Source: Piromyces finnis finn (Eukaryota > Fungi > Neocallimastigomycota). Taken from it: DNA of 64,000 nucleotides. Both the position numbers and the translations under genes were made by a program. The stretch is taken from assembly GCA_002104945.1 (NCBI GenBank), contig MCFH01000055.1:310001-374000 (forward strand), written 5' to 3'. The notes below the pieces were generated by a model. The model was not told where the DNA came from. It saw only the letters and a program-made list of their open reading frames with translations, and searched no databases. Shown here one piece after another: positions 3,001-55,181 of the stretch; the stretch's first letter is position 1, and the number at the start of each line of letters is the position of its first letter.

Positions 3001-3587
3001 GGTAAGGCTTGATACAGTAAACCAATTTTTTCTTCATCATCTATTTTCACATTTAGTTGTTCTAACTTATTAAAGTTGGAATTTAACTTATTTACAAATC
3101 TTGAGAAACTTTCTTTCGGGTCGTATTTTAAGGAGTTTGTTTCCTTAATAAGCCTATTCTTTCTTTCTATTTTATCCCCTAAATAAATGTCTTCTAATAG
3201 TTTCCACATTTCGTAGCTTGTTAAAGACCTATCTTGGATATCTTGTTGGCAGTTTGGGCCTAAAGTATACCTAATTAAAAATTGGATATTCCTATCTGTT
3301 TTTAAGTCATCTTCGGTTACGTTCTTATCATAGTAGGTATTGATTTCAAAAGGTGCCTTTAGATATTCTTCTCCGTCGATATCCATTCCTTCGTCACTTT
3401 TGATCTTTGGGGTTTTGTTTTCATCAACCCAATCTTCAAGACCATAATAATTTAAAATATTCCTCATAAACATTTGCCACGTTATGAAATTTTTATTGTT
3501 CAATTCATAAGTGACCTTTCCTAGCATAACGGTAGGATCGAATATAGGAATTGATCCAGTATCTCCGTTAGATTTTCTTTTTGACAT
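1..3587 (-). CDS. copia Gag-Pol polyprotein, partial (open to the window edge)
   Basis: ATG at 3587 (MSKRKSNGDTGSIPIFDP...LNNKNFITW). Gag motif LLYQALPEKY ~3000; zinc knuckle CYFCHQKGHTVKQC ~2665-2705; protease WTLDSGASNH ~2385-2412; pre-integrase WHRRIGHLN ~1970-1998; integrase LVHIDLVGP, LRSDNGTEF, PEQNGRAER, FWEDAVKTANYVHNR, VFGC, GIFIGY. Spot-checked motifs share one frame. The ORF is absent from the track, consistent with no stop codon before the edge. Confidence 0.93.
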   Translation of the reverse strand, partial: MSKRKSNGDTGSIPIFDPTVMLGKVTYELNNKNFITWQMFMRNILNYYGLEDWVDENKTPKIKSDEGMDIDGEEYLKAPFEINTYYDKNVTEDDLKTDRNIQFLIRYTLGPNCQQDIQDRSLTSYEMWKLLEDIYLGDKIERKNRLIKETNSLKYDPKESFSRFVNKLNSNFNKLEQLNVKIDDEEKIGLLYQALPEKYRKVTVLKHEDWEECKKDTARMIDKMNKFDPKEKSETFGIRHIFSVEGSYKGDKRKESTKYYRNKQSNNHNKNTNKGKEKSNEERNWNNKNKQNITCYFCHQKGHTVKQCRIQKELSEEVTRRLRKEKNKGKEAFLATGEIVNKQTTEDFEPEVGYQDLFTVDYNALFDNNNDECNNKSCNYVSCENVPTSFTTWTLDSGASNHITKDIGILKNVFEHVEPINYANGATTKSTHMGEVNGSINEEPIKLEDVMYIPDVKRNLISVAKLVKSGYQIIFDEKNNNVFAYIKDKKTDNVYEVKANEYDVFNLYIKEGNVVNNYSMCDNVRNNGEYWHRRIGHLNFNNNDEKNNIHNCTICMRSKMKEIPHKRSDSRASSVLELVHIDLVGPITPSIHDNVYFLSILDDYSRYGWVIFVKNKSDVFKEFGNWLNKTTNELSSKVKYLRSDNGTEFTSNNFKELCNEYGITQQFTVPGNPEQNGRAERFNGKLIKTATAMLMDARLCRRFWEDAVKTANYVHNRVPHSGINGEIPFELMYNRKVDYKNLRVFGCKVYYLDDSNIPKFQDKTKEGIFIGYDESSVGYRIFDIKSRKIKVKRVVGFLEEEPGDYNYNLEKENNNETYSQDTETFQVRNFNYMYDKENENNNNKDKKEKDISNENDKLMNENLETLNDKTSNKEDLKEVNYEEKFRNIEEKLDKLTSLLNKEKNNSSESFMQVCEDTNDSNMSIEDSEEEDLNLLDYIKLKEKKKERLNKNNYQKIEEMEENKEIKISTSMESVSETNKEKENNNDISGSNDGNINNFTLEENNLKYNNLKYNSADETEICEIKEVNIKRNDDKKNKNINSKDNSNISKDNKRNNKYLNAKGNVYFIEENSDIVNKNELIEEVLKTPSEMEINDLTGEIDNNDFLNILSPDIDLGTRKKIDFENIESVKNNINKNNRKEIENNYSNVKVNYKNEEYYKKNYIPINENEIRRNLNKENINIPEEKSKFKNISDEKE

Positions 3588-3613
3588 ATTAAAAAAAAAC
3601 TTACTTAAATATA

Positions 3614-3635
3614 AGAGCAATTGAGACTCTTAATC
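3614..3635 (-). other. Primer-binding site complementary to the anticodon arm of tRNA-Lys(CUU)
   Basis: The minus strand reads ...TCTGACA|GATTAAGAGTCTCAATTGCTCT. The plus strand TGAGACTCTTAATC (3622-3635) equals eukaryotic tRNA-Lys(CUU) positions ~27-40, and AGAGC (3614-3618) matches the 3' D-stem. Confidence 0.8.
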
Positions 3636-3870
3636 TGTCAGATAAATTTAGTTTACACTTAAATTTATTTATAAAACTATTTGGGTTTTTATAATCTTTT
3701 ATTTATTTATATTTATTTTATAATATAAATATTGTAACTTTCTTAAAATCTTTTTATTAAAAAATAACCAAAGAATAAAAATGTAGTACAATATTAATTT
3801 ATAATTTTATAAAATACAAATACATAAAAAATACATAAAATATTATTTTGGAATGTATTTTATTTTCACA
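3636..3870 (-). repeat. Putative 5' LTR (inner end at 3636 supported; outer end unresolved)
   Basis: Ends in ...TGACA directly before the PBS on the minus strand. There is no partner LTR in the window to define its length. Confidence 0.4.
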
Positions 3871-3912
3871 ATTTTTGAATAATATGTATTATTATTTAAT
3901 GTATATTATTAT

Positions 3913-3919
3913 CCAATCA
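3913..3919 (+). promoter_or_regulatory. CCAAT box (CCAATCA) upstream of ADE2
   Basis: Exact CCAATCA 190 bp before the ADE2 ATG; the same heptamer recurs before other housekeeping genes in the window. Confidence 0.5.
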
Positions 3920-4102
3920 ATAATCAAATCAAGATACATTTTGTTTAAAAATTATAATTAAATTAAATACAAAAAAAAAATATCATTATTCTTTACTTTA
4001 AAAAAAAAAAAAGAGTATCATTACTAAATTATTATTTTAAAAATAAATTGATAAATTTATATTTTTTCTTTTTTTCAATTTTTTAAATAATAATAAATAA
4101 AC

Positions 4103-6238
4103 ATGGATAAGAAGGTTATTGGTATGAATAATTTATTTTATATTTTTATTTAATTTTCTAAAAAAGAATAAAATAAATGAAAATTAAATATCAACATATC
4201 AATATGAATACTTAATCAAGGAATAAAAAAAAATATGAACTTATATATTAATTATTTTAAATATAAATAGGAGTTCTTGGTGGCGGTCAATTAGGTCGTA
4301 TGATGATGGAACCAGCCAACAATTTAAATTTAAAGGTTTGCATTCTTGATGCTAATGATGCCCCAGCTACTCAAGTTCAAGTTTCCGACCACGTTGATGG
4401 TGATTTCAAAGATGAAGCTAAGATTCAAGAATTAGCCAAGAAATGTGATGTTTTAACTATGGAAATCGAACATGTTAACTGTGATGCTCTTGAACGTATT
4501 GCTAAGGAAAATCCAAATATCGATATTCAACCAACTCCACAAACCGTTAGAATCATTCAAGATAAATTCCTTCAAAAGGAACACCTTAAACAATTCAATA
4601 TTCCACTTCCAGAATATGCTAGTGTTACTGATAAGCAATCAATTTTAGATATTGCCAACAATCAAGGCTTTGGTTTCCCAATTATGTTAAAATCCAGAAA
4701 GTTAGCTTATGATGGTAGAGGTAATGCTGTTATTAATAACGAAAATGAAATTGATGATGCTATTAAGGCCTTAAACCCATCAGGTGCAAATGATGCTTTA
4801 TATGTTGAAAAGTGGGTTCCATATGCTAAGGAATTAGCTGTTATGGTTGCTCGTAGTAAATCTGGTAACACTGTTTCTTACGAAGCTGTTGAAACTATTC
4901 AAAAAGACAATATTTGTCATATCGTATTCGCTCCAGCCCAAATTGATGGTTTAATTCAAAAGAATGCAAAGGCTATTGCTGAAAAGGCTATTGCTTGCTT
5001 ATATGGCGCTGGTATTTTTGGTGTTGAAATGTTCTATCTTGAAAATGGTAATATAAATTATATATATATATATAACTTATTATTTAAATATTTATATTAT
5101 AAAAACTAAAATAAAATAAAACATCTGTTTATTAGAAATTATGAATTAATTTTTTTTTTATATATTATTATATATTAATAATTATTTTAAAATAAAAAAA
5201 GGTGAAATTCTCGTTAACGAAATTGCTCCACGTCCACATAATTCTGGTCATTACACTATTGAATCTTGTGAAACTTCACAATTTGAACAACATATTCGTG
5301 CTATTTTAGATATGCCATTAGGTTCTACTAAGATGAGAGTCGGTGCCGCTGCTATGGTTAACATTCTCGGTACTGGAAATGGTGAAGAAGGTTTAGCTGA
5401 TACTCTTCGTCCTTGCCAAGCTTCTATGACTATTCCTGGTGCTACTGTTCATTTATACGGTAAACGTGAATGCCGTAAAGGTAGAAAGATGGGTCACATC
5501 ACTGTAACCGCCGATACCATGCCAGAAGTTGTTGAAAAGGTTGAAAAACTTTTAGAACATATGCCAAATGGTAAGAAATATAACTTCAGCATTTCACCAA
5601 TGGTTGCTATTATTATGGGTAGTGATTCCGATTTACCAACTATGAAGCCATGTGCTCAAATCTTAAAGGACTTTGATGTTCCATTTGAACTTTCTATTGT
5701 TTCTGCTCACCGTACCCCAGAAAGAATGGTTGAATATGCAAAGAATGCTCATAAGAGAGGTATTAAGTTAATTATTGCTGCCGCTGGTGGTGCTGCTCAC
5801 CTTCCAGGTATGGTTGCTGCTATTACTCCACTTCCAGTTATTGGTTGTCCAGTTGCCTTAAGAGTTCTTGATGGTGTTGATTCTTTATACTCTATTGTTC
5901 AAATGCCAGTAAGTATAATAACATTTATTTTTAATAGTTTTATGATTAGAAAGCTATTTTTTTTTTTATTAATAAAAATAAAATTTAACTAATGATGATA
6001 ACTTCTTAAAAAATTATTTTATTTATACTCTATATAAATTATATAGCGTGGTGTCCCAGTTGCTACTGTTGCTATCAATAACTCCACCAATGCTGCTTTA
6101 TTAGCTGTTCGTATTCTTGGTTCTTCTATTCCAAAATACTTAGATAAAATGGTTAAATACCAAACTAATATGAATGAAGAAGTTTTAGTTAAAGTTGATA
6201 AATTAGAAAAGGTCGGATGGGAAAACTACCAAAAGTAA
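4103..6238 (+). CDS. ADE2: Phosphoribosylaminoimidazole carboxylase (PurK-PurE fusion), 4 exons
   Basis: Exons ~4103-4121, 4271-5047, 5202-5908, 6047-6238, all GT-AG. Motifs [67 protein letters not shown]. Confidence 0.97.
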
Positions 6239-33702: not shown

Positions 33703-36143
33703 ATGTTTTTAGTATTTGAACAATCTATTTTACCATACGCTGAAGTATTAACTTATCTTTTAGCTAATGTTGAAAAGAAATTAAAGGTTGGTTTAGCTGC
33801 TTATGATGCTGACAATTCAGTTGTTCTTCATATTTTACCAACCGAAGAAGATGCCAATAAAAAGATGTTAATTGGCAAATGCAGTGTTTCTAGATATTTC
33901 GCTAGAATTGCTTCAAAGCCATTATATTCTTCATTAACTTTACAAAATCAAATTATTGTTGATGATGTTTTAGATAATATTAGAAATGGTCGTGTTTCTG
34001 AAGTTTTAAAGGTTATTAATGCTGCAAATGGTAATTTCATTCTTGGTAATGATATTTCATTAGCTGATATTGTTTCCTATGATTTCTTTAAGGTTAAACC
34101 ACAAAAGAAATCCTCTGAAGCTTTCAACAATTGGTTTAATAAGATTGACTCCTTACCAGAAGCTGTTGAAACTGAAAAGATTATTAAAGATGCCCTCAGT
34201 ACTGCTGATGTTAATGATATTTTCAAGTTAAAGATTGCTGAACAACTTTCAGAATTATCTGGTGCTGAAAAGAAAGTTATTTTCAATTTATTAACACCAC
34301 CAGCTAAGCCAGAATATGGAGATTACTCAATCCCAGTTGCTAGATTACGTCTTCAAGGTAATCCAGTTGCCTTAGCTAAAGAATTCAGTGAAAAAGTAAA
34401 TATTATTTTTATTATATAATTTTTAAATAGTAATTAAATTTAAATCGAGTGATTATAGTAATGAAAAATATTTATATATGTTTACGTATACCTTTTTTAA
34501 TATAATATTAATATTAATTATTTTTCTTCGAATTTTTAATAATTTTACTTATAAATCAATATATAATATCAATATAAAAAAAATTAAACAATATCTCGTT
34601 ATTAAAATCCTAATAATCATAGTTCCAAACCAATGAATTCATTACTGCTACTAATTCAATTGGTATGTTCTTAAACTTCTCTATTTCTAGAGACACTCTT
34701 CGTGATGTTTTAATTCCAAGAGTTTTATCTTTAAAGGATAACTATGGTACTAACGCTACTGGTGCTGGTAAGGTTTCAGTTGTTGAATTCAGTAGTCCAA
34801 ACATTGCTAAACCATTCCATGCTGGTCATTTAAGAAGTACTATTATTGGTAACTTTGTACAAAATGTCTTAAAGGCCAACGGTCATAAAACTATTGGAAT
34901 TAACTACTTAGGTGATTGGGGTAAACAATATGGTTTATTAGCTGTTGGTTACAAGAAATATGGTAATGATGAAGAATTAGAAAAGGATCCAATTAAGCAT
35001 TTATTCCATGTATATGTTAATGTTAACAGAGATGCTTCTGAAAACCCAGCTGTTCATGATGAAGCTAGAGCTTACTTCAAAAAGATGGAAGATGGTGATG
35101 AAGAAGCTCTTGCTTTATGGTCTAAATTTAGAAGCTTATCTATTGTTAAGTACAAGGAAATTTACGCTCGTTTAAATGTCAATTTCGATGTTTACTCTGG
35201 TGAATCTATGTATTCTGAAGGTATGGTTGAAGTATTAAATCAATTAAAGGAATTAAATTTATTAGAATTATCCGAAGGTGCTCAAATTGTTAACTTAAAG
35301 CCATACAAACTTGGCGGTGCTATCATTGCTAAGACTGATGGTACTACTTTATACATTACTCGTGATATTGCTGCTGCTATTGAACGTTATCGTACTTACA
35401 AGTTCGATTCTATGTACTATATTGTTGGTGCTCAACAAGATCACCACTTCCGTCAATTATTCAAGATTCTTGAATTAATGGGTATGCCATGGGCTAGCCA
35501 ATGTCACCACATCAATTTCGGTTTAGTTAAGAGTAAGGATGGTCAAATGAGTACTCGTAAGGGTACTGTTGTCTTCTTAGAAGAAATTCTTGATGCCACT
35601 AAGAATGAAATGCATGATGTAATGAAGAAGAATGAAAACAAGTACAAGCAAATTGAAGATCCAGAATATGTTTCTGATGTTGTTGGTATGTCTGCTGTTA
35701 TGACTCAAGATATGATGGCTCGTCGTGTTAAGGATTACGAACTTGACTGGAACAGAATGTTATCTTTCGAAGGTGATACTGGACCATACTTACAATATGC
35801 TCACGCTCGTCTTTGTTCTATTGCTCGTAACCAAAGTCAATATGTTATTGACGAAAACACTGATATCTCTTGCTTAACTGAAAAGGAAGCTAAGGATCTT
35901 ATCAACATCATTTCTCAATACCCAGAATTAGTTAAGTCTATTCCAGCTCAATTAGAACCATGTATGGTTGTTTCATACTGTATGAAATTAGCTCATGCCG
36001 TTTCTCAAGCCTTAGAAGCCTTATGGGTCCAAGGTCAAGAAGAAAATGTTGCTAAGGCTAGATTAGCTTTATACGCCTGTGCAAGAATTACCTTACACAA
36101 TGCTTTAAGTATTTTAGGTATTCGTCCATTAGAAAAGATGTAA
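33703..36143 (+). CDS. RARS: Arginyl-tRNA synthetase with N-terminal GST-like domain, 2 exons
   Basis: Exons ~33703-34395 and 34624-36143. YGDYSIP; SSPNIAKPFHAGHLRSTIIGN; NYLGDWGKQ; KTDGTTLYITRD; MSTRKG; GDTGPYLQYAHARL. Confidence 0.96.
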
Positions 36144-47433: not shown

Positions 47434-48495
47434 ATGACAGAAGTACTAACATATTTATTAAATCCTTCTAAACTTGATACTAATGAAGTAATGTTATTGT
47501 TAAATACTTATAATTAAATAATAAATATTGTAATAATATGATTATTATTAATACAGAATCAAAAAAAAAAAAAAAAAAAAAGATTTTAAGTTTTTGAAAT
47601 TTCAATTCCATTTTAATTTTATATTATTATTAAAAATAAAATAAGATAAAATGAATAAGTGAATAAATAAAAATAAAAGTAAAAAAGATAAAGAAAGAAA
47701 AGAAAATATTTTAATTATAAACATGATTTTAACTTTTTCATTTTTTTTATAAAATTAAAACTATAATTCTTTAATTCCAAAATTAAAGTTAAGTATTGAG
47801 GATGGTAAATTGCTTTTAAAAACATTTATGAAAAAAGCAAACTTTGTTAGTGAACCTATCAATGATCCTTCAAAATTATCAGAAAGACAAATTTTATACT
47901 TAAAATTGTCCTATAAGGTAAATTGGTTTGATTTATTGGATATATTAATTCCTTTTTAAAAAAGGCCAAAATTTGATTCTGAAATTCTTTTTAATTATGA
48001 ATTTTTTATTTTTAACCTTGTAATAAATTTTAATAATAATAACAATTTAAAACAAAAAGATAATATCAAGATTTAAATATACCATACAAGTAATTGAAGA
48101 AATATTACCAATAGAGTCACAAGCATTTTTATTTATATATTATGTTATTTTGTTAGTACCTATATATCATTGAAATTTTTCACTAATTAATTAGTATATA
48201 ATAAGAAAATATATATTTATTTGTTTTCTTGATTACTTCTTTTTTTTTATTATTATTATTAACAATATTTATATAATAGTTCAAAGGATAAAATTAATGT
48301 CGAAGATGTTTGTAATGATCCGAATATATTATATAAACGTTGGCTAATAAGGAACATATCAAAACCTAATACTCACCCAACAAATTATATTATAAAAGAA
48401 ATTCGAAGCTTAGATGGAACAGACCATCATCTTCAAGACCTAAATGATATAATTGAAAAGAATATTAATTATAATAGTAATCAAGAGGTAAAATT

Positions 48496-48529
<34 letters not shown>

Positions 48530-48578
48530 GCTGTTGTTATTGTTGTAAAATACAAAAATATAAATTTTAAAATAGTTA

Positions 48579-48609
<31 letters not shown>

Positions 48610-51600
48610 GTGACCTAATAAAGCAAATGAAAACATACACAAATTACTAAAAATTTCTTCAAATAAATTGTTTCTTATACATATTAAAAAAAAAAAAAAA
48701 AGGTACTTAGTAATTGGAAATGTCAATATCATATATTTAGTTTTTTATGCCAATTGTCTTATGAAATTGGGAATTATTATATATATAAAGAAGACTTTGC
48801 AAATGCAGAAATTCATTTTAGACGTTGTGATACCCTTCTTCAATTAGGTGATATTTATAATGATAAATTTTGGTAATTAACAACTCTTTATTAATCGCAT
48901 CATTATCATACATATACTTATATATATATAAAATAAAAAAAAAAAAAAAAAAAAAACTAATAATATTTATTTGAATTTATATTTATTAATATATTATTTT
49001 TGTATTATTTATTTGATTATATTTAAACTAAAAATACATATAGTGATGTTGAAAAAACCCAAGTAGACGATTTATTATATGTATGTGAATTATTCAATAA
49101 TTCATTAGATAATAAAATTAATAAAATACAAAAATTTATTGATGAAGAAACATACAATGAAGATTTAATTAATGTATTAATGGAAGATAATAATTCTGAA
49201 AAGAAATTGATATCAAAGGAAATACGACAATATTTAGTAGAGCAATCAAAGGAACAACCAGTCATTTCCATAGGCATTGCTGTTGTGAATGCTTTAAACA
49301 ACATTAATATTACTAGCGAACAAGATATATCTAAAGAAAAATTAGATATGATAAATCAACAGAATGGTAACAAGCATTGCTACTTTATTTTGATAATAAA
49401 AAAAAATTAATCATCTATTATTTTATTATTAATAATTTTTCTTATCGATATTGAAATCTCTATTAAATTTACAAATCTTATAATTTAATTTTTAATTATT
49501 TAATTTTAAAAAAAAAAAAAAGGCGAGCTTTTTATTCATATTTTATCAATGATGACTTATTCAATGGATGTTAAGAGTTTATCCAAAGATCTTATATTTA
49601 AAATATTTAAAAAAGCTATGGAAGATAATATTAATAATAATATTGTAAAAGAAAAAATCATTAACTTTGTTTGTCAATTATGTTATTATATCGATAATAC
49701 AGAATATTGGAATGATTTCTTTGAAAATATATCAAGTATAGATTTTATATAAATATTCATATATATTATAAATAATTATTTTTGATAGACCATTAATATT
49801 TTATATATATAAATGAATTATATTTTATTGTAGATAATTATCCACAAGAATGGTCTATATTCCAGAGACTTAAACAAGTAGAAGCAGTAAGTATTCATCA
49901 ACACCAATAATATAAAAAAATAAAAATAAAAATAAAACTAAAAACTCTTATTAATAATATAATTCATTAATAAATAAAATTTATAAATTGATTAGATTAA
50001 TAATTATGTAGTAAACAGTGAAATCTGGGGTTCTATTGGAAATAGTAGTATTGCTGAAGGTGAAACTGATTATATTGAAAATGTTGAAGTAAGTTAATAA
50101 CAATAGATATTTTTAGTAGTTAATAATATGTGAAATTTTATTATTGTTGTTGTTGTTGTATTAATAATAACATGAATAATAATTGAATTACAAATTTTAT
50201 AATATCAGTCATGTAATATAATGAGAAAATTAATGATATATCCAGAATCAGATGATCTTATCAAAGCAACTTCTATTAATAGTGTTGATAAAGTAAAAAT
50301 AATATAAAAAAATTTAATATAACCCTCTATGATACAATGAATACAAAAAGTTGTTAATTAACAGTCTATTATTATTATAATAATTATTTTAGATGGGTGT
50401 AAGTCTTGTTAAAGCTCTTTTACAACATGGTGAAAGATTTTATAACGAGGTTAGTAATAATTTTATTAATACTTAAATAAAGCTTACTTTTAAGTAAAAA
50501 ATATATTAATAATATTAAAATAATAAATATATATACCAATTTTTTTTTCCTAAATTGTAGAGTCAATATGAAAAAGCAATTCAGATATTTAATCGTTATG
50601 GACAATTTTTAGCAAATCAACTGGAAAGTGATAGTATTCATTTTCAACAAATAATTAAAAATACTACTATTGCCCAATCTTTAGAAAAAATTAATCAATT
50701 TTATGATAATAATAAATTTCTTTTGATGATACCCTCAATGCAACAAAAAGACACTGAGCAAGAAGATATTTTATGGAGTGATTTCATGAATATTTTCCAA
50801 TATTCTGGACCAGTAGATTTAGAACTTTTGGTAATTTAATGATTATTAACATTAATTATTTAAAATAAATCATACCTATATTCATCTCAATTAATAGTCA
50901 TATAAAATTAGTATTAAAATAGTTTTGTATTGATTTTTACTGATGATTAACATTTATTAATTTTATCTTTCTAACTCTTAAAAAATTAGAAACGTATTTT
51001 AGGCACTGCTTTAAGAAACGTAAATATAAAATTTATAGAGGGATATATACGGTTTATAAATTCTTGGTATCAAGATAGTAAGTAAAAATATATATTTCTA
51101 TGATTATTATTCTTTAATTATTAACTATTAAATTTATCTTTTAGATGCTGCCATGATACAAGAAGGTTCTCTTCAAGCTGCTTATATAGATCAGCGACTT
51201 TGTAAAATATCGTTAATTATATCTCATCAAATTAAAAATTTAATTGAATCTGGTATTGATTTTTCAAATGATGCTAGTATTAATGGTAAAAATAAAAGAA
51301 AAAGAAATGATACCTATTTTTCATCTAAATCATTATTAAAGTTCAAAAAATAATAACAATTCTGCTCCCTTTTATTATTTAATTTCTAGATGATTCAAAA
51401 TATTCACAACTTCAAGAAAAAACTATAGAAGAATTACGTATATTCTGTTTTAGACTTTTTGATTGTTTATTGCCAAATACTTCTTTATATGATATCAAGG
51501 TAGATGTTATGTTTTTATAATACTTAAATATGTTGTTTATTAATGTTTATTATTAATATTATTATTATTTTATTATTGTGTTTTTATATTTATTTAATAT

Positions 51601-53042
51601 TGTATTAGACTCTTTTAACAGCATTTTCCGATATATTGAAAAATGCAAAAAATATTAATATCTCTACCTTTATTGGAGGATGTATTGCAGGAATTCTTCA
51701 TCGTGTTGGTTTATTGGTAATACTATAGTTAGCTTAAAAATAAATAATGAAGTTTTTATCCAATTTTAACAATATATATAATTTTTGGAATAATATAAAT
51801 AGATTAATCTTGAGTCTTTTGGCATTAATGCAGTAATTTCAGCATCACCCTTAGCACCAGACATTGTTAAATCATGGGCAAAGTAATAATATTGATAATA
51901 TATTATATATTAAAAGTATTTCATATATAAAATATATATTAAGATTTTTCTTTTTTCTAATACTGTTTTCTTAAACAACAAAAGTGCACAATATGTATTG
52001 AAGATTTTAAATTCAAAACCTATTAATGATACTATTTTTAAAGAAAATGTTGAAACTATAAAAGAGTTTATTATACCAATTTTAATGCAAAATATATATT
52101 CCTCGATTCTCTATGAACAAAAGCATGTTGATTGTACAGGTCTTTTTTGTCTTGCTGATTTATATTTTATTAATCAAGACTATGATAATTCTTTGAAGTA
52201 AAAATTATTAATAAATAATAATAATACGCTAAATAAAAATAATAATAATGATAATAACATATTATCTATTTGTATTTCCATTTTTGTAAAATAACAATCA
52301 ATTTTTTTATATCATTAAAGATACTTCTTAAATGCATTATCGTTACTTTCATCTCAATTTACACATATGGAAAAATTAGAAAATATTTGGTATTCAAGAA
52401 TTACTTCACAAATTATACAATGTTGTATAAATAAAAAAGAATGGTTACTAGCATGTATTTTGTATCAATTTAGTTTTAAAATTGATTATATATCAGCCTA
52501 TAATTTAATTCAAAAGTCAATTAATGAAAATCAAATTTACCAAGAAATTAAAATTGGTAATATTTATATAATTGATAATAAGCATGAACCAACTGAACAA
52601 ACGTTTACTTCATTAAATTTCTTTTGGGATCTTTCTCTTATGGAATATTGTATAGGTAATATTAATATCTTTTTTTTTTTTTTTTTTCCATATTATAATA
52701 GTATATATAATTTATTTATTTTTATTTACATAAAAAAAAAAATGAAATATCATTGGCTTATTTTATTTAATAGATTGTTTTCAAAAAAGAGGCATGCTAG
52801 ATGAAACAAATAAAATAGTAAGAATTTTTGAAGATTTTAACTTGAGATAATTCATAAAACAAAAAAATAATAAAGTATTAATAATCTTTTTATTTCAATT
52901 ATATTTTAATAATAATCCGATATTATAGAAAGAGCATATCTCAAATACTTATTCAGTGGACGAATCTACCCGAAAGATTATCATATCCAAAATACAAAAA
53001 ACATTTTTAAGATACTTGACAGAAAAAGTTATTAGCATTTAA
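47434..53042 (+). CDS. INTS8: Integrator complex subunit 8 homologue, about 20 exons
   Basis: Collinear matches to remembered human INTS8: LYKRWLIRNI (LYNRWAIRTI); CQLSYEIGNYY (CQVCYDLGAAY); LMEDN..IRQ (FIEDN..FRQ); LADLYFINQDYDNSLKYFL (QADIYFATNQYSAALHYYL); QIIQCC..ACILYQF..IDYISAYNLIQ (RMIKCC..VAILCQF..IDYKTAFKSLQ); FWDLSLMEY..QKRG (IWDVTILEY..HKRG); KTFLRYL (KKFLQAM). Confidence 0.85.
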
Positions 53043-53903: not shown

Positions 53904-55181
53904 ATGCAATATACAACATCACTGGAAATTGAAATTCCACAATATTCTAAAAGTAATATTGTAAAAAATGAATACGAATCAAATATGAAAATAAAAGATA
54001 AATATGAAAAAGAAATTAAGTTGTTAAAGAATCAAATAGAAATCTTAAATACTAAATTAAAATTTTCGGAAAAACGAAATGCAGAATCAGGAGAGCAATT
54101 AGAAATGGTAAATAAACAAATGAAGGATAACGATGATGAATTAGTTAAATTAAGAAATCAAAATAACTCATTAAAAAGAGAAAATGTTACTTTAAAAGAT
54201 AATAATTTATCTATTAATGTTCAAAATACCCATTTAACTACAGATTTCAATGAAATTGCAACACATTATGCTCATTTGAAAGAAAAATATGAACAACTAT
54301 CGAAAGATAATGAAAAATTAAAAAAAACCAATATTTCTCTTTCCGACAAGTATTCGGAACTAACCAAAGAATACAATCATATTTCTTCTCAATATTTGAA
54401 AATTAAAGATAAAGTAGAACAAATCGTAAAAGAAAATACAAAAATTATTTTTGAAAATAAAAAATTAAATCAACAAATACAAGAATTAATTGAAGAGATT
54501 CAGAAGTTAAATGATAATGCAAAAGATTTAGCCAATACCAATGATAAATTAACTGATGATATTAAAGAAATGACTATAGATATTAAAAATTTAACTATAG
54601 AATTAAAGTCTCTCAAGAATCAAAATCAAACTCTCCAAATAGAGAATTCAGAGTATAGGGAAAGATGCTCACGAAACTCTAAGGAAATTGAAAAATATCG
54701 CTTAGAAAATACAAAATTAGCCAATCAATTAAAATTGGCACTTGAAGAAAATTGCAAACTTCAAAAAATGAATACCAATTTAAATATTGATAATAAGCAA
54801 TTAATGTCGCAAAACGAGACACTTATTCAAGAAAATGATATTATTAATAAAGAGGTTGGACAACTTCGTAAAAAAATACGTGAACTTAAAGAATTAAATG
54901 AAAAGTATTGCGATGAAATTAGTCAACTTCATAGTGAAAATGAGCGTATGTGTGGTGAACGTGCTGTATTAGAAGGAAGAATTAAGAGAGGTCTTAATCA
55001 AATTAATGAAATCCAACGTATGAATAAAAATTTAGAAGATGAATTAAATACCAAACAGCAAGAAAAATATAAATCCCAAATAAGTCAACATTACTTATCT
55101 TCCACAACAAAAAATATAAAAAAAAATAAAAATCCAAATTCGGAATTTAATTTAGAAATTAATTTTAAACCTACAAAATAG
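53904..55181 (+). CDS. Uncharacterised long coiled-coil protein (425 aa ORF)
   Basis: Uninterrupted ORF with heptad L/I/N periodicity, K/E/N/Q-rich. No family recognised; extra exons are possible. Confidence 0.7.
   Translation: MQYTTSLEIEIPQYSKSNIVKNEYESNMKIKDKYEKEIKLLKNQIEILNTKLKFSEKRNAESGEQLEMVNKQMKDNDDELVKLRNQNNSLKRENVTLKDNNLSINVQNTHLTTDFNEIATHYAHLKEKYEQLSKDNEKLKKTNISLSDKYSELTKEYNHISSQYLKIKDKVEQIVKENTKIIFENKKLNQQIQELIEEIQKLNDNAKDLANTNDKLTDDIKEMTIDIKNLTIELKSLKNQNQTLQIENSEYRERCSRNSKEIEKYRLENTKLANQLKLALEENCKLQKMNTNLNIDNKQLMSQNETLIQENDIINKEVGQLRKKIRELKELNEKYCDEISQLHSENERMCGERAVLEGRIKRGLNQINEIQRMNKNLEDELNTKQQEKYKSQISQHYLSSTTKNIKKNKNPNSEFNLEINFKPTK

What the first reader, a model, noticed from the sequence alone, without database searches (positions are those of the whole stretch)
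47434..53042. Full-length Integrator subunit 8 homologue in a fungus
Seen: a ~20-exon gene with at least seven collinear motif matches to human INTS8 from N- to C-terminus (listed in the feature). Known: Integrator is absent from budding and fission yeast and is usually described in animals; INTS8 links the complex to PP2A. Inference: early-diverging fungi keep an Integrator, possibly with its phosphatase arm. This would mean snRNA 3' processing and promoter-proximal termination differ from the Nrd1-Nab3-Sen1 route of yeast.
Basis: partly seen in the sequence, partly recalled or inferred. Interest (0 to 1): 0.7.

Follow-up and report, generated by a model that had tools for sequence, protein, structure and literature searches.

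The report
Integrator subunit 8 gene, gut fungus
This is a real, intact 21-exon gene of the anaerobic gut fungus Piromyces finnis that encodes a much-diverged relative of Integrator subunit 8, a scaffold of the animal complex that cuts and terminates short RNA polymerase II transcripts. The gene is already called in the public annotation with INTS8 family matches, so it confirms what the databases hold and is not a discovery.

Summary
Window 47434-53042 (+) is exactly one gene call in the public assembly GCA_002104945.1 (MCFH01000055.1). Its product is 992 aa and has precomputed Pfam matches to two INTS8-specific families, TPR_INTS8_3 and TPR_INTS8. My own GT-AG model has 21 exons and the same start, stop and length.

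Independent support:
- One exon alone matches TPR_INTS8 (E 1.4e-5).
- That exon's only relative among 1.84 billion proteins is a chytrid protein that NCBI names Integrator complex subunit 8.
- A two-sequence fungal profile finds human INTS8 residues 855-920 as the only significant solved structure.
- The exons are collinear with the chytrid INTS8 locus and share three intron positions with it.

The host is a fungus: the nearest named ArgRS relatives are chytrids.

The wider reading is not shown. The PP2A-recruiting WFEF motif is absent from the model, and the catalytic subunits INTS4/9/11 could not be looked for. Direct exon-to-human matches were not detectable.

The spliced protein was searched exon by exon only; the joined step was left out. 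Earlier scan notes on other DNA of this genome report INTS13, INTS14 and NELF-A/B.

Verdict: an ordinary member of a known family in a lineage the literature ignores. Modest interest.

The parts
47434..53042 (+). Whole INTS8-like gene, start codon to stop codon; 21 exons, 992 aa
   Evidence: The public gene call has the same ends and a 992-aa product with Pfam TPR_INTS8_3 and TPR_INTS8. The hand model gives 2979 nt with a single terminal stop.
47434..47487 (+). Exon 1 (ATG; 18 codons)
   Evidence: First ATG after an in-frame stop; donor GTAATG. No WFEF motif here.
47789..47917 (+). Exon 2
   Evidence: Open frame; acceptor AAAG, donor GTAAAT.
48060..48151 (+). Exon 3. I missed it in my first model and added it to reach the public length.
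   Evidence: Adding an exon that starts at 48060 brought the model to 991 aa. The unique +3 nt splice alternative (exon end 48151, next exon start 48280) then gave 992 aa. Donor GTTAGT.
48280..48487 (+). Exon 4
   Evidence: Acceptor TAATAG, donor GTAAAA. The best match on the chytrid locus is at L001 370, which is collinear.
48703..48872 (+). Exon 5, holds one canonical TPR motif
   Evidence: Pfam TPR_8 E 9e-4. Matches L001 616-678, z 4.1.
49044..49366 (+). Exon 6
   Evidence: Open frame, GT-AG. Best match at L001 953, collinear.
49523..49735 (+). Exon 7
   Evidence: Open frame, GT-AG.
49834..49886 (+). Exon 8
   Evidence: Open frame, donor GTAAGT.
49996..50088 (+). Exon 9
   Evidence: Open frame, donor GTAAGT.
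50209..50292 (+). Exon 10
   Evidence: Open frame, GT-AG.
50393..50449 (+). Exon 11
   Evidence: Open frame, donor GTTAGT.
50561..50830 (+). Exon 12
   Evidence: Matches L001 1399-1482, z 2.3, collinear.
50990..51077 (+). Exon 13
   Evidence: Open frame, donor GTAAGT.
51145..51285 (+). Exon 14
   Evidence: Open frame, GT-AG.
51390..51499 (+). Exon 15; ends ...DIK, at the same place as a chytrid exon
   Evidence: Shared intron position with L001 3276.
51609..51716 (+). Exon 16
   Evidence: Matches L001 3389-3472, z 3.4. This stretch is treated as intron in the chytrid annotation.
51803..51882 (+). Exon 17; starts INLESFG, at the same place as the chytrid exon IQLEHFG
   Evidence: Matches L001 3583-3648, z 2.9; shared intron position.
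51985..52197 (+). Exon 18; its end (CLADLYF...SLK) begins the conserved INTS8 C-terminal block
   Evidence: Matches L001 3815-3925, z 3.4. Its 3' intron is at the same position as in the chytrid gene; the same phase (2) is read from the donor context and is inferred, not computed.
52321..52655 (+). Exon 19, the best-conserved piece
   Evidence: Pfam TPR_INTS8 E 1.4e-5, profile positions 348-413 of 488. Its only hit in 1.84 billion proteins is chytrid INTS8. Match to L001 has z 16. A profile with the chytrid piece hits human INTS8 855-920, E 1.1e-5.
52774..52817 (+). Exon 20
   Evidence: Matches L001 4519-4557, z 2.4, collinear.
52929..53042 (+). Exon 21 with the stop codon
   Evidence: Best match L001 4706-4789, collinear, z 1.3.

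Best explanation
The locus is the Piromyces finnis orthologue of Integrator subunit 8. It is a 992-residue, all-helical TPR-type scaffold protein encoded by 21 short exons in very AT-rich DNA. Shown here: the gene is intact, it belongs to the INTS8 family, and it is orthologous to a chytrid INTS8 gene. Inferred from what INTS8 does in animals (PMC8091971, PMC9006982): it sits in the 'shoulder' of an Integrator-type complex and holds other subunits in place, so that the INTS11 endonuclease can cut nascent snRNA and promoter-proximal Pol II transcripts. Whether it also docks PP2A in this fungus is open, because the animal docking motif is not there.
For: The public gene call at the same coordinates has a 992-aa product with precomputed Pfam TPR_INTS8_3 and TPR_INTS8. 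One exon alone scores 24.4 bits, E 1.4e-5, on TPR_INTS8. That exon's only hit among 1.84 billion representative proteins is KAJ3083638.1, 'Integrator complex subunit 8, partial' of the chytrid Quaeritorhiza haematococci. The chytrid protein passes TPR_INTS8 at 63.6 bits and hits human INTS8 chain 7cun_H at E 1.5e-9. A profile of the P. finnis exon plus the chytrid piece hits human INTS8 855-920 at E 1.1e-5, and the next hit has E 0.94. The chytrid piece alone gives only E 0.0029, so the P. finnis exon adds INTS8-specific signal. Best matches of the 21 exons on the chytrid locus form an increasing chain of 12 (chance about 1.5e-4); the opposite-strand control gives 8. Three intron positions are shared. 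All introns are GT-AG, with exon GC 25% against intron GC 13%.
Against: No single exon gives a direct match to human INTS8. Two-sequence profiles of the N-terminal exons hit only generic TPR proteins. The exon-level Pfam score is under the whole-protein cut-off of 27 bits. The WFEF motif is absent. No other Integrator subunit was checked here. The structure model of the best exon was too poor to use (pLDDT 48.7).
Confidence: 0.88

Rival explanations
1. It is a true INTS8 descendant, but a relic that now works outside an Integrator complex, for example as a scaffold for something else, because the catalytic module or the PP2A link has been lost in this lineage.
For: The PP2A-recruiting WFEF motif is absent from the model. 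The sequence is very diverged, with no direct exon-level match to human INTS8. No catalytic subunit was seen here.
Against: The gene stays intact over 21 exons. It is conserved with a chytrid gene across about 90% of its length, including intron positions. Unchecked scan notes report INTS13, INTS14 and NELF-A/B in the same genome.
Confidence: 0.15
2. It is a generic TPR or helical-repeat protein that resembles INTS8 only by repeat composition.
For: Exon 5 matches only generic TPR families and generic TPR structures. The feature-based Atlas searches returned only generic TPR or unrelated clusters.
Against: Two INTS8-specific Pfam families match the full product. The only hit in 1.84 billion proteins is an INTS8. 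Human INTS8 is the only significant PDB hit of the fungal profile, at the matching C-terminal position. The matched block is not a canonical TPR consensus.
Confidence: 0.03
3. It is an unexpressed or decaying gene copy.
For: Expression was not verified here. No relative was found in JGI metagenome or metatranscriptome contigs.
Against: There is no in-frame stop or frameshift in 2979 nt across 21 exons of 13%-GC-flanked DNA. All splice sites are canonical. Runs from three studies hold an exon-sized share of the locus.
Confidence: 0.04

Closest known systems
Human INTS8 (995 aa; chain H of PDB 7CUN, also 7PKS, 8RBX and others)
   Same: Nearly the same length (992 against 995 aa). The helical/TPR C-terminal block at the same relative place (model residues about 830-898 against human 855-920) is recognised by a fungal profile at E 1.1e-5. 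The same Pfam families match.
   Different: Very low identity: no single exon finds the human protein directly. The WFEF PP2A-recruiting motif is absent. The partners are unknown.
Quaeritorhiza haematococci KAJ3083638.1, 'Integrator complex subunit 8, partial' (Chytridiomycota)
   Same: It is the only sequence relative found. Identity is 39-50% in the C-terminal block. Exons are collinear from window exon 4 to exon 21, and three intron positions are shared.
   Different: Its genome is 51% GC against 21% here. Outside the C-terminal block the similarity is weak (z 2-4). The chytrid gene model is partial and seems to skip conserved exons.
Nrd1-Nab3-Sen1 pathway of budding yeast
   Same: Both terminate short non-polyadenylated Pol II transcripts such as snRNAs. 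This rests on established knowledge and was not tested here.
   Different: The proteins and mechanism are unrelated. Nothing in this window bears on whether P. finnis also has this pathway.

Membership tests
INTS8 (Integrator complex subunit 8; Pfam TPR_INTS8 PF25756 and TPR_INTS8_3 PF26725) | Match to the INTS8-specific profiles | tested here: met
   Precomputed hits of both families on the 992-aa public product at this locus; they are unmarked, meaning E at most 1e-5. Exon 19 alone gives E 1.4e-5 and 24.4 bits, on profile positions 348-413 of 488. I did not score the joined protein myself.
INTS8 | The nearest relatives are INTS8 proteins and lead back to animal INTS8 | tested here: met
   The only hit in 1.84 billion proteins is chytrid INTS8. 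That protein hits human INTS8 at E 1.5e-9. The fungal two-sequence profile hits human INTS8 as the only significant PDB sequence.
INTS8 | Full-length architecture: about 1000 aa, helical repeats throughout, collinear with animal INTS8 from N to C terminus | tested here: inconclusive
   The length of 992 aa fits. Collinearity is shown with the chytrid locus, but not directly with human INTS8 outside residues 855-920. N-terminal exon profiles hit only generic TPR proteins. The AF2 model of one exon is helical but low-confidence.
INTS8 | WFEF motif that recruits PP2A (defined in Drosophila and human, PMC8091971) | tested here: not met
   The 992-aa hand model has no WFEF and no W-[FYL]-[DE]-[FYLIV]. 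An in-frame WFDL lies in intron 2 at 47924-47935 and is not coding in this model.
INTS8 | Physical association with INTS5, INTS6 and the Integrator backbone | not testable with these tools
   Needs the rest of the proteome and biochemistry.
Integrator complex present in this fungus | Catalytic module INTS4/INTS9/INTS11 encoded in the genome | not testable with these tools
   Only this 64-kb window can be read. The scan notes hold no INTS11 or CPSF73 entry. INTS13 and INTS14 notes exist but are unchecked.
Fungal origin of the window | Housekeeping genes group with early-diverging fungi | tested here: met
   The ArgRS of the window is 68% identical to that of Rhizophlyctis rosea, and every named hit is a chytrid, mucoromycete or zoopagomycete. 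A PurK-PurE fusion is present. The window is identical to MCFH01000055.1 of GCA_002104945.1, which earlier agents call Piromyces finnis.

The most novel reading that the evidence does not exclude
Anaerobic gut fungi and chytrids keep a working Integrator together with NELF. That would mean the Integrator/NELF pause-and-terminate system predates the split of animals and fungi and was lost in Dikarya. In these fungi INTS8 would join the complex without the animal WFEF motif, so PP2A would be docked differently or not at all.
Probability: 0.45. Interest if true: 0.6.

Novelty: new member of a known kind. Interest (0 to 1): 0.33.

Why it matters
Reviews still call Integrator metazoan-specific or restricted to metazoans (PMC9006982; abstract of 10.1101/2023.03.05.531184). 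None of my ten full-text searches found a paper that discusses Integrator in early-diverging fungi. A clean INTS8 in Neocallimastigomycota and in a chytrid shows that this subunit was present in the fungal ancestor and was lost later. Together with the NELF and minor-spliceosome genes noted elsewhere in this genome, it makes P. finnis a candidate for asking how snRNA 3' ends and promoter-proximal termination work in a non-yeast fungus. The gene itself is already in public databases, so the value is as a pointer and not as a discovery.

Tried and rejected
- Pfam on all exon-sized open frames: only exon 19 hit TPR_INTS8.
- phmmer of single exons against PDB sequences: no INTS8.
- Two-sequence profiles of exons 4 and 5 with their chytrid counterparts: only generic TPR or chance hits.
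- ESM Atlas feature search with exon 19 and with the chytrid protein: generic TPR or unrelated clusters, recognition low.
- Word search with the chytrid INTS8, whole and by region: only itself. The length window of 253-805 aa shuts out full-length INTS8, so this blank says little.
- Metagenome scan with exon 19: no relative.
- AF2 of exon 19 with a two-row alignment: pLDDT 48.7. No fold search was run on it, because a poor model gives meaningless matches.
- My first 20-exon model (959 aa) was rejected in favour of the 21-exon model, which reproduces the public length.
- Rfam on the window: only a tRNA, so there is no snRNA gene whose 3' box could be examined.
- The joined (spliced) protein was not sent to any search, family scan or fold tool. 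It was assembled only inside local scripts for length, stop and motif checks.
Full report
**What is there.** The window is very AT-rich (21% GC). Between 47434 and 53042 the + strand carries a string of short open frames separated by stretches of 10-19% GC.

I built a splice model by hand from GT..AG sites that keep the frame open. The first version had 20 exons and 959 codons. Looking up the neighbouring single-exon gene (window 53904-55178) in the public collections returned locus L002. L002 is NCBI GCA_002104945.1, record MCFH01000055.1, positions 353904-375181, and it is identical to the window over the whole overlap.

Its product is 992 aa. Adding one missed exon in the long second intron, and taking the single splice alternative that adds three bases, gives a 21-exon model. 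That model is 2979 nt and 992 codons, with the same start and stop. All 20 introns are GT-AG and 67-301 nt long. Exons are 25.1% GC and introns 13.0% GC. The model has the public length, but I could not check that it is residue-for-residue the public product.

**What it is.** The public product carries precomputed Pfam matches to TPR_INTS8_3 (PF26725) and TPR_INTS8 (PF25756), both INTS8-specific.

I left out the joined step: no joined protein went to any search, family-scan or fold tool. Within that limit:

- Exon 19 (52321-52655) alone matches TPR_INTS8 at E 1.4e-5, 24.4 bits, profile positions 348-413 of 488. No other exon reaches an INTS8 profile.
- The same exon, scored against 1.84 billion representative proteins, has one hit at E 6.5e-4 with 40% identity.
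- That hit is KAJ3083638.1, 'Integrator complex subunit 8, partial', of the chytrid Quaeritorhiza haematococci.
- The chytrid protein passes TPR_INTS8 at 63.6 bits and matches human INTS8 (7cun_H, residues 818-919) at E 1.5e-9.
- A profile of the P. finnis exon plus the matching chytrid piece finds human INTS8 residues 855-920 at E 1.1e-5. The next PDB sequence has E 0.94. The chytrid piece alone reaches only E 0.0029, so the P. finnis sequence adds INTS8-specific signal.
- In the model this block is residues about 830-898 of 992, the same relative place as in the 995-residue human chain.

**Orthology along the gene.** I fetched the chytrid locus (L001) and aligned each exon translation to its open frames, using shuffled-exon controls. 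Eight exons have their best match in strictly rising order on L001:

| Window exon | L001 match | z | p |
|---|---|---|---|
| 48703-48870 | 616-678 | 4.1 | <0.01 |
| 50561-50830 | 1399-1482 | 2.3 | about 0.05 |
| 51609-51716 | 3389-3472 | 3.4 | about 0.01 |
| 51803-51880 | 3583-3648 | 2.9 | about 0.02 |
| 51986-52195 | 3815-3925 | 3.4 | about 0.01 |
| 52322-52654 | 4026-4127 | 16 | <0.01 |
| 52776-52817 | 4519-4557 | 2.4 | about 0.03 |
| 52929-53039 | 4706-4789 | 1.3 | about 0.13 |

With the 21-exon set, the longest increasing chain of best matches is 12 of 21, with a chance of about 1.5e-4. The opposite strand of L001 gives 8 and a rank correlation of zero.

Three intron positions coincide: after ...DIK, before I(N/Q)LE(S/H)FG, and at K|(Y/L)(F/Y)LNA. 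At the third I read the same phase (2) in both genes from the donor context; this is inferred, not computed. The match therefore runs from exon 4 to the last exon. The chytrid contig starts inside the gene, so exons 1-3 have no counterpart to compare.

**Which organism.** The window's ArgRS exon is 68% identical to that of the chytrid Rhizophlyctis rosea. All named hits are Chytridiomycota, Mucoromycota or Zoopagomycota. Unnamed JGI and Logan transcripts are 85-96% identical. A PurK-PurE fusion gene is also present. Earlier follow-up agents of this scan name the genome Piromyces finnis, of the Neocallimastigomycota. I also recall that this assembly accession is P. finnis, but that rests on memory. 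So 'in a fungus' is right.

**What is not shown.**
- Direct similarity of single exons to human INTS8 is below detection. Profiles of N-terminal exons hit only generic TPR proteins.
- Animal INTS8 recruits PP2A through a WFEF motif (PMC8091971). The 992-aa model has no WFEF or close variant. From my memory of the human N-terminus, exon 1 (…VLTYLLNPSKL…) may be the counterpart. That is a lead only.
- The claim that a whole Integrator, with a phosphatase arm, is kept rests on other subunits that I could not search. Notes by other first readers report INTS13 and INTS14 (unchecked). Follow-up agents report NELF-A and NELF-B as real genes in the same genome. I tested none of these.
- Expression is unverified. 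Four runs from three studies hold 31-42% of the locus's sampled words, close to the 49-50% of the stretch that is exonic, as spliced RNA would.

They lie in intron 1.
- They were included in two local pairwise BLAST runs inside my own scripts, against the single fetched chytrid protein and locus.
- They were also read in local intron-scan, intron-length and GC counts.
- No conclusion rests on those places.

**Mechanism.** Shown: an intact, conserved gene for an INTS8-family helical scaffold. Inferred from animal work (PMC8091971, PMC9006982): the protein forms part of the shoulder of an Integrator-type complex and positions other modules, so that INTS11 can cleave nascent snRNA and promoter-proximal transcripts. 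I put about 0.88 on family membership and orthology, and about 0.55-0.6 on a role in a real Integrator complex. PP2A docking is open.

**Novelty.** The gene model and its INTS8 Pfam matches are already public, and NCBI names the chytrid orthologue INTS8. The literature I could search still describes Integrator as metazoan-restricted (PMC9006982; abstract of 10.1101/2023.03.05.531184). It holds no paper on Integrator in early-diverging fungi. This is a new member of a known kind, of modest interest.

Noticed in passing
window 47924-47935: Reading on in frame past the exon-2 donor gives ...KVNWFDLLDILIPF and then a stop. It contains WFDL, which looks like the animal PP2A-recruiting WFEF motif that the spliced model lacks. 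No GT donor lies before the stop. A T5/A6 homopolymer pair follows at about 47951-47963, where a length error would reopen a frame up to a GTAATA at 48020. This may be chance, or the 5' model or the assembly may be imperfect here.
   Followed up: partly
L001 370-700, 3389-3472, 4361-4402, 4519-4557, 4706-4789: The NCBI model of the Quaeritorhiza INTS8 (KAJ3083638.1, partial) seems to miss several stretches that are conserved with the P. finnis exons. These are upstream N-terminal exons, one internal exon that it treats as intron, and the true C-terminal exons; its last 31 residues are in other frames.
   Followed up: partly
window 48488-48702, 49367-49522, 47918-48059: Introns 2, 4 and 6 end in a run of A directly before the AG (…AAAAAAAAAAAG) in place of a pyrimidine tract. 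Intron 4 holds a run of about 30 T and a run of about 22 A.
   Followed up: no
window 47434-53042: The search of 1.84 billion representatives with exon 19 did not return the 992-aa public product of this very gene, nor any other gut-fungus orthologue, although the product is on record in the gene-position collection. I have no explanation.
   Followed up: no
They lie in intron 1, in A-rich low-complexity DNA.
   Followed up: no
window 53904-55181: The downstream single-exon gene encodes a 425-aa coiled-coil protein with a match to Pfam ATG16 just above its cut-off (36.6 bits against 33.7). It is called in the public annotation without any Pfam family.
   Followed up: partly
window 34665-36140: The ArgRS of the window has unnamed JGI and Logan relatives at 96, 92 and 85% identity on 2.3-2.9 kb contigs, apparently spliced transcripts of sister gut fungi. 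No such transcript was found for INTS8.
   Followed up: no
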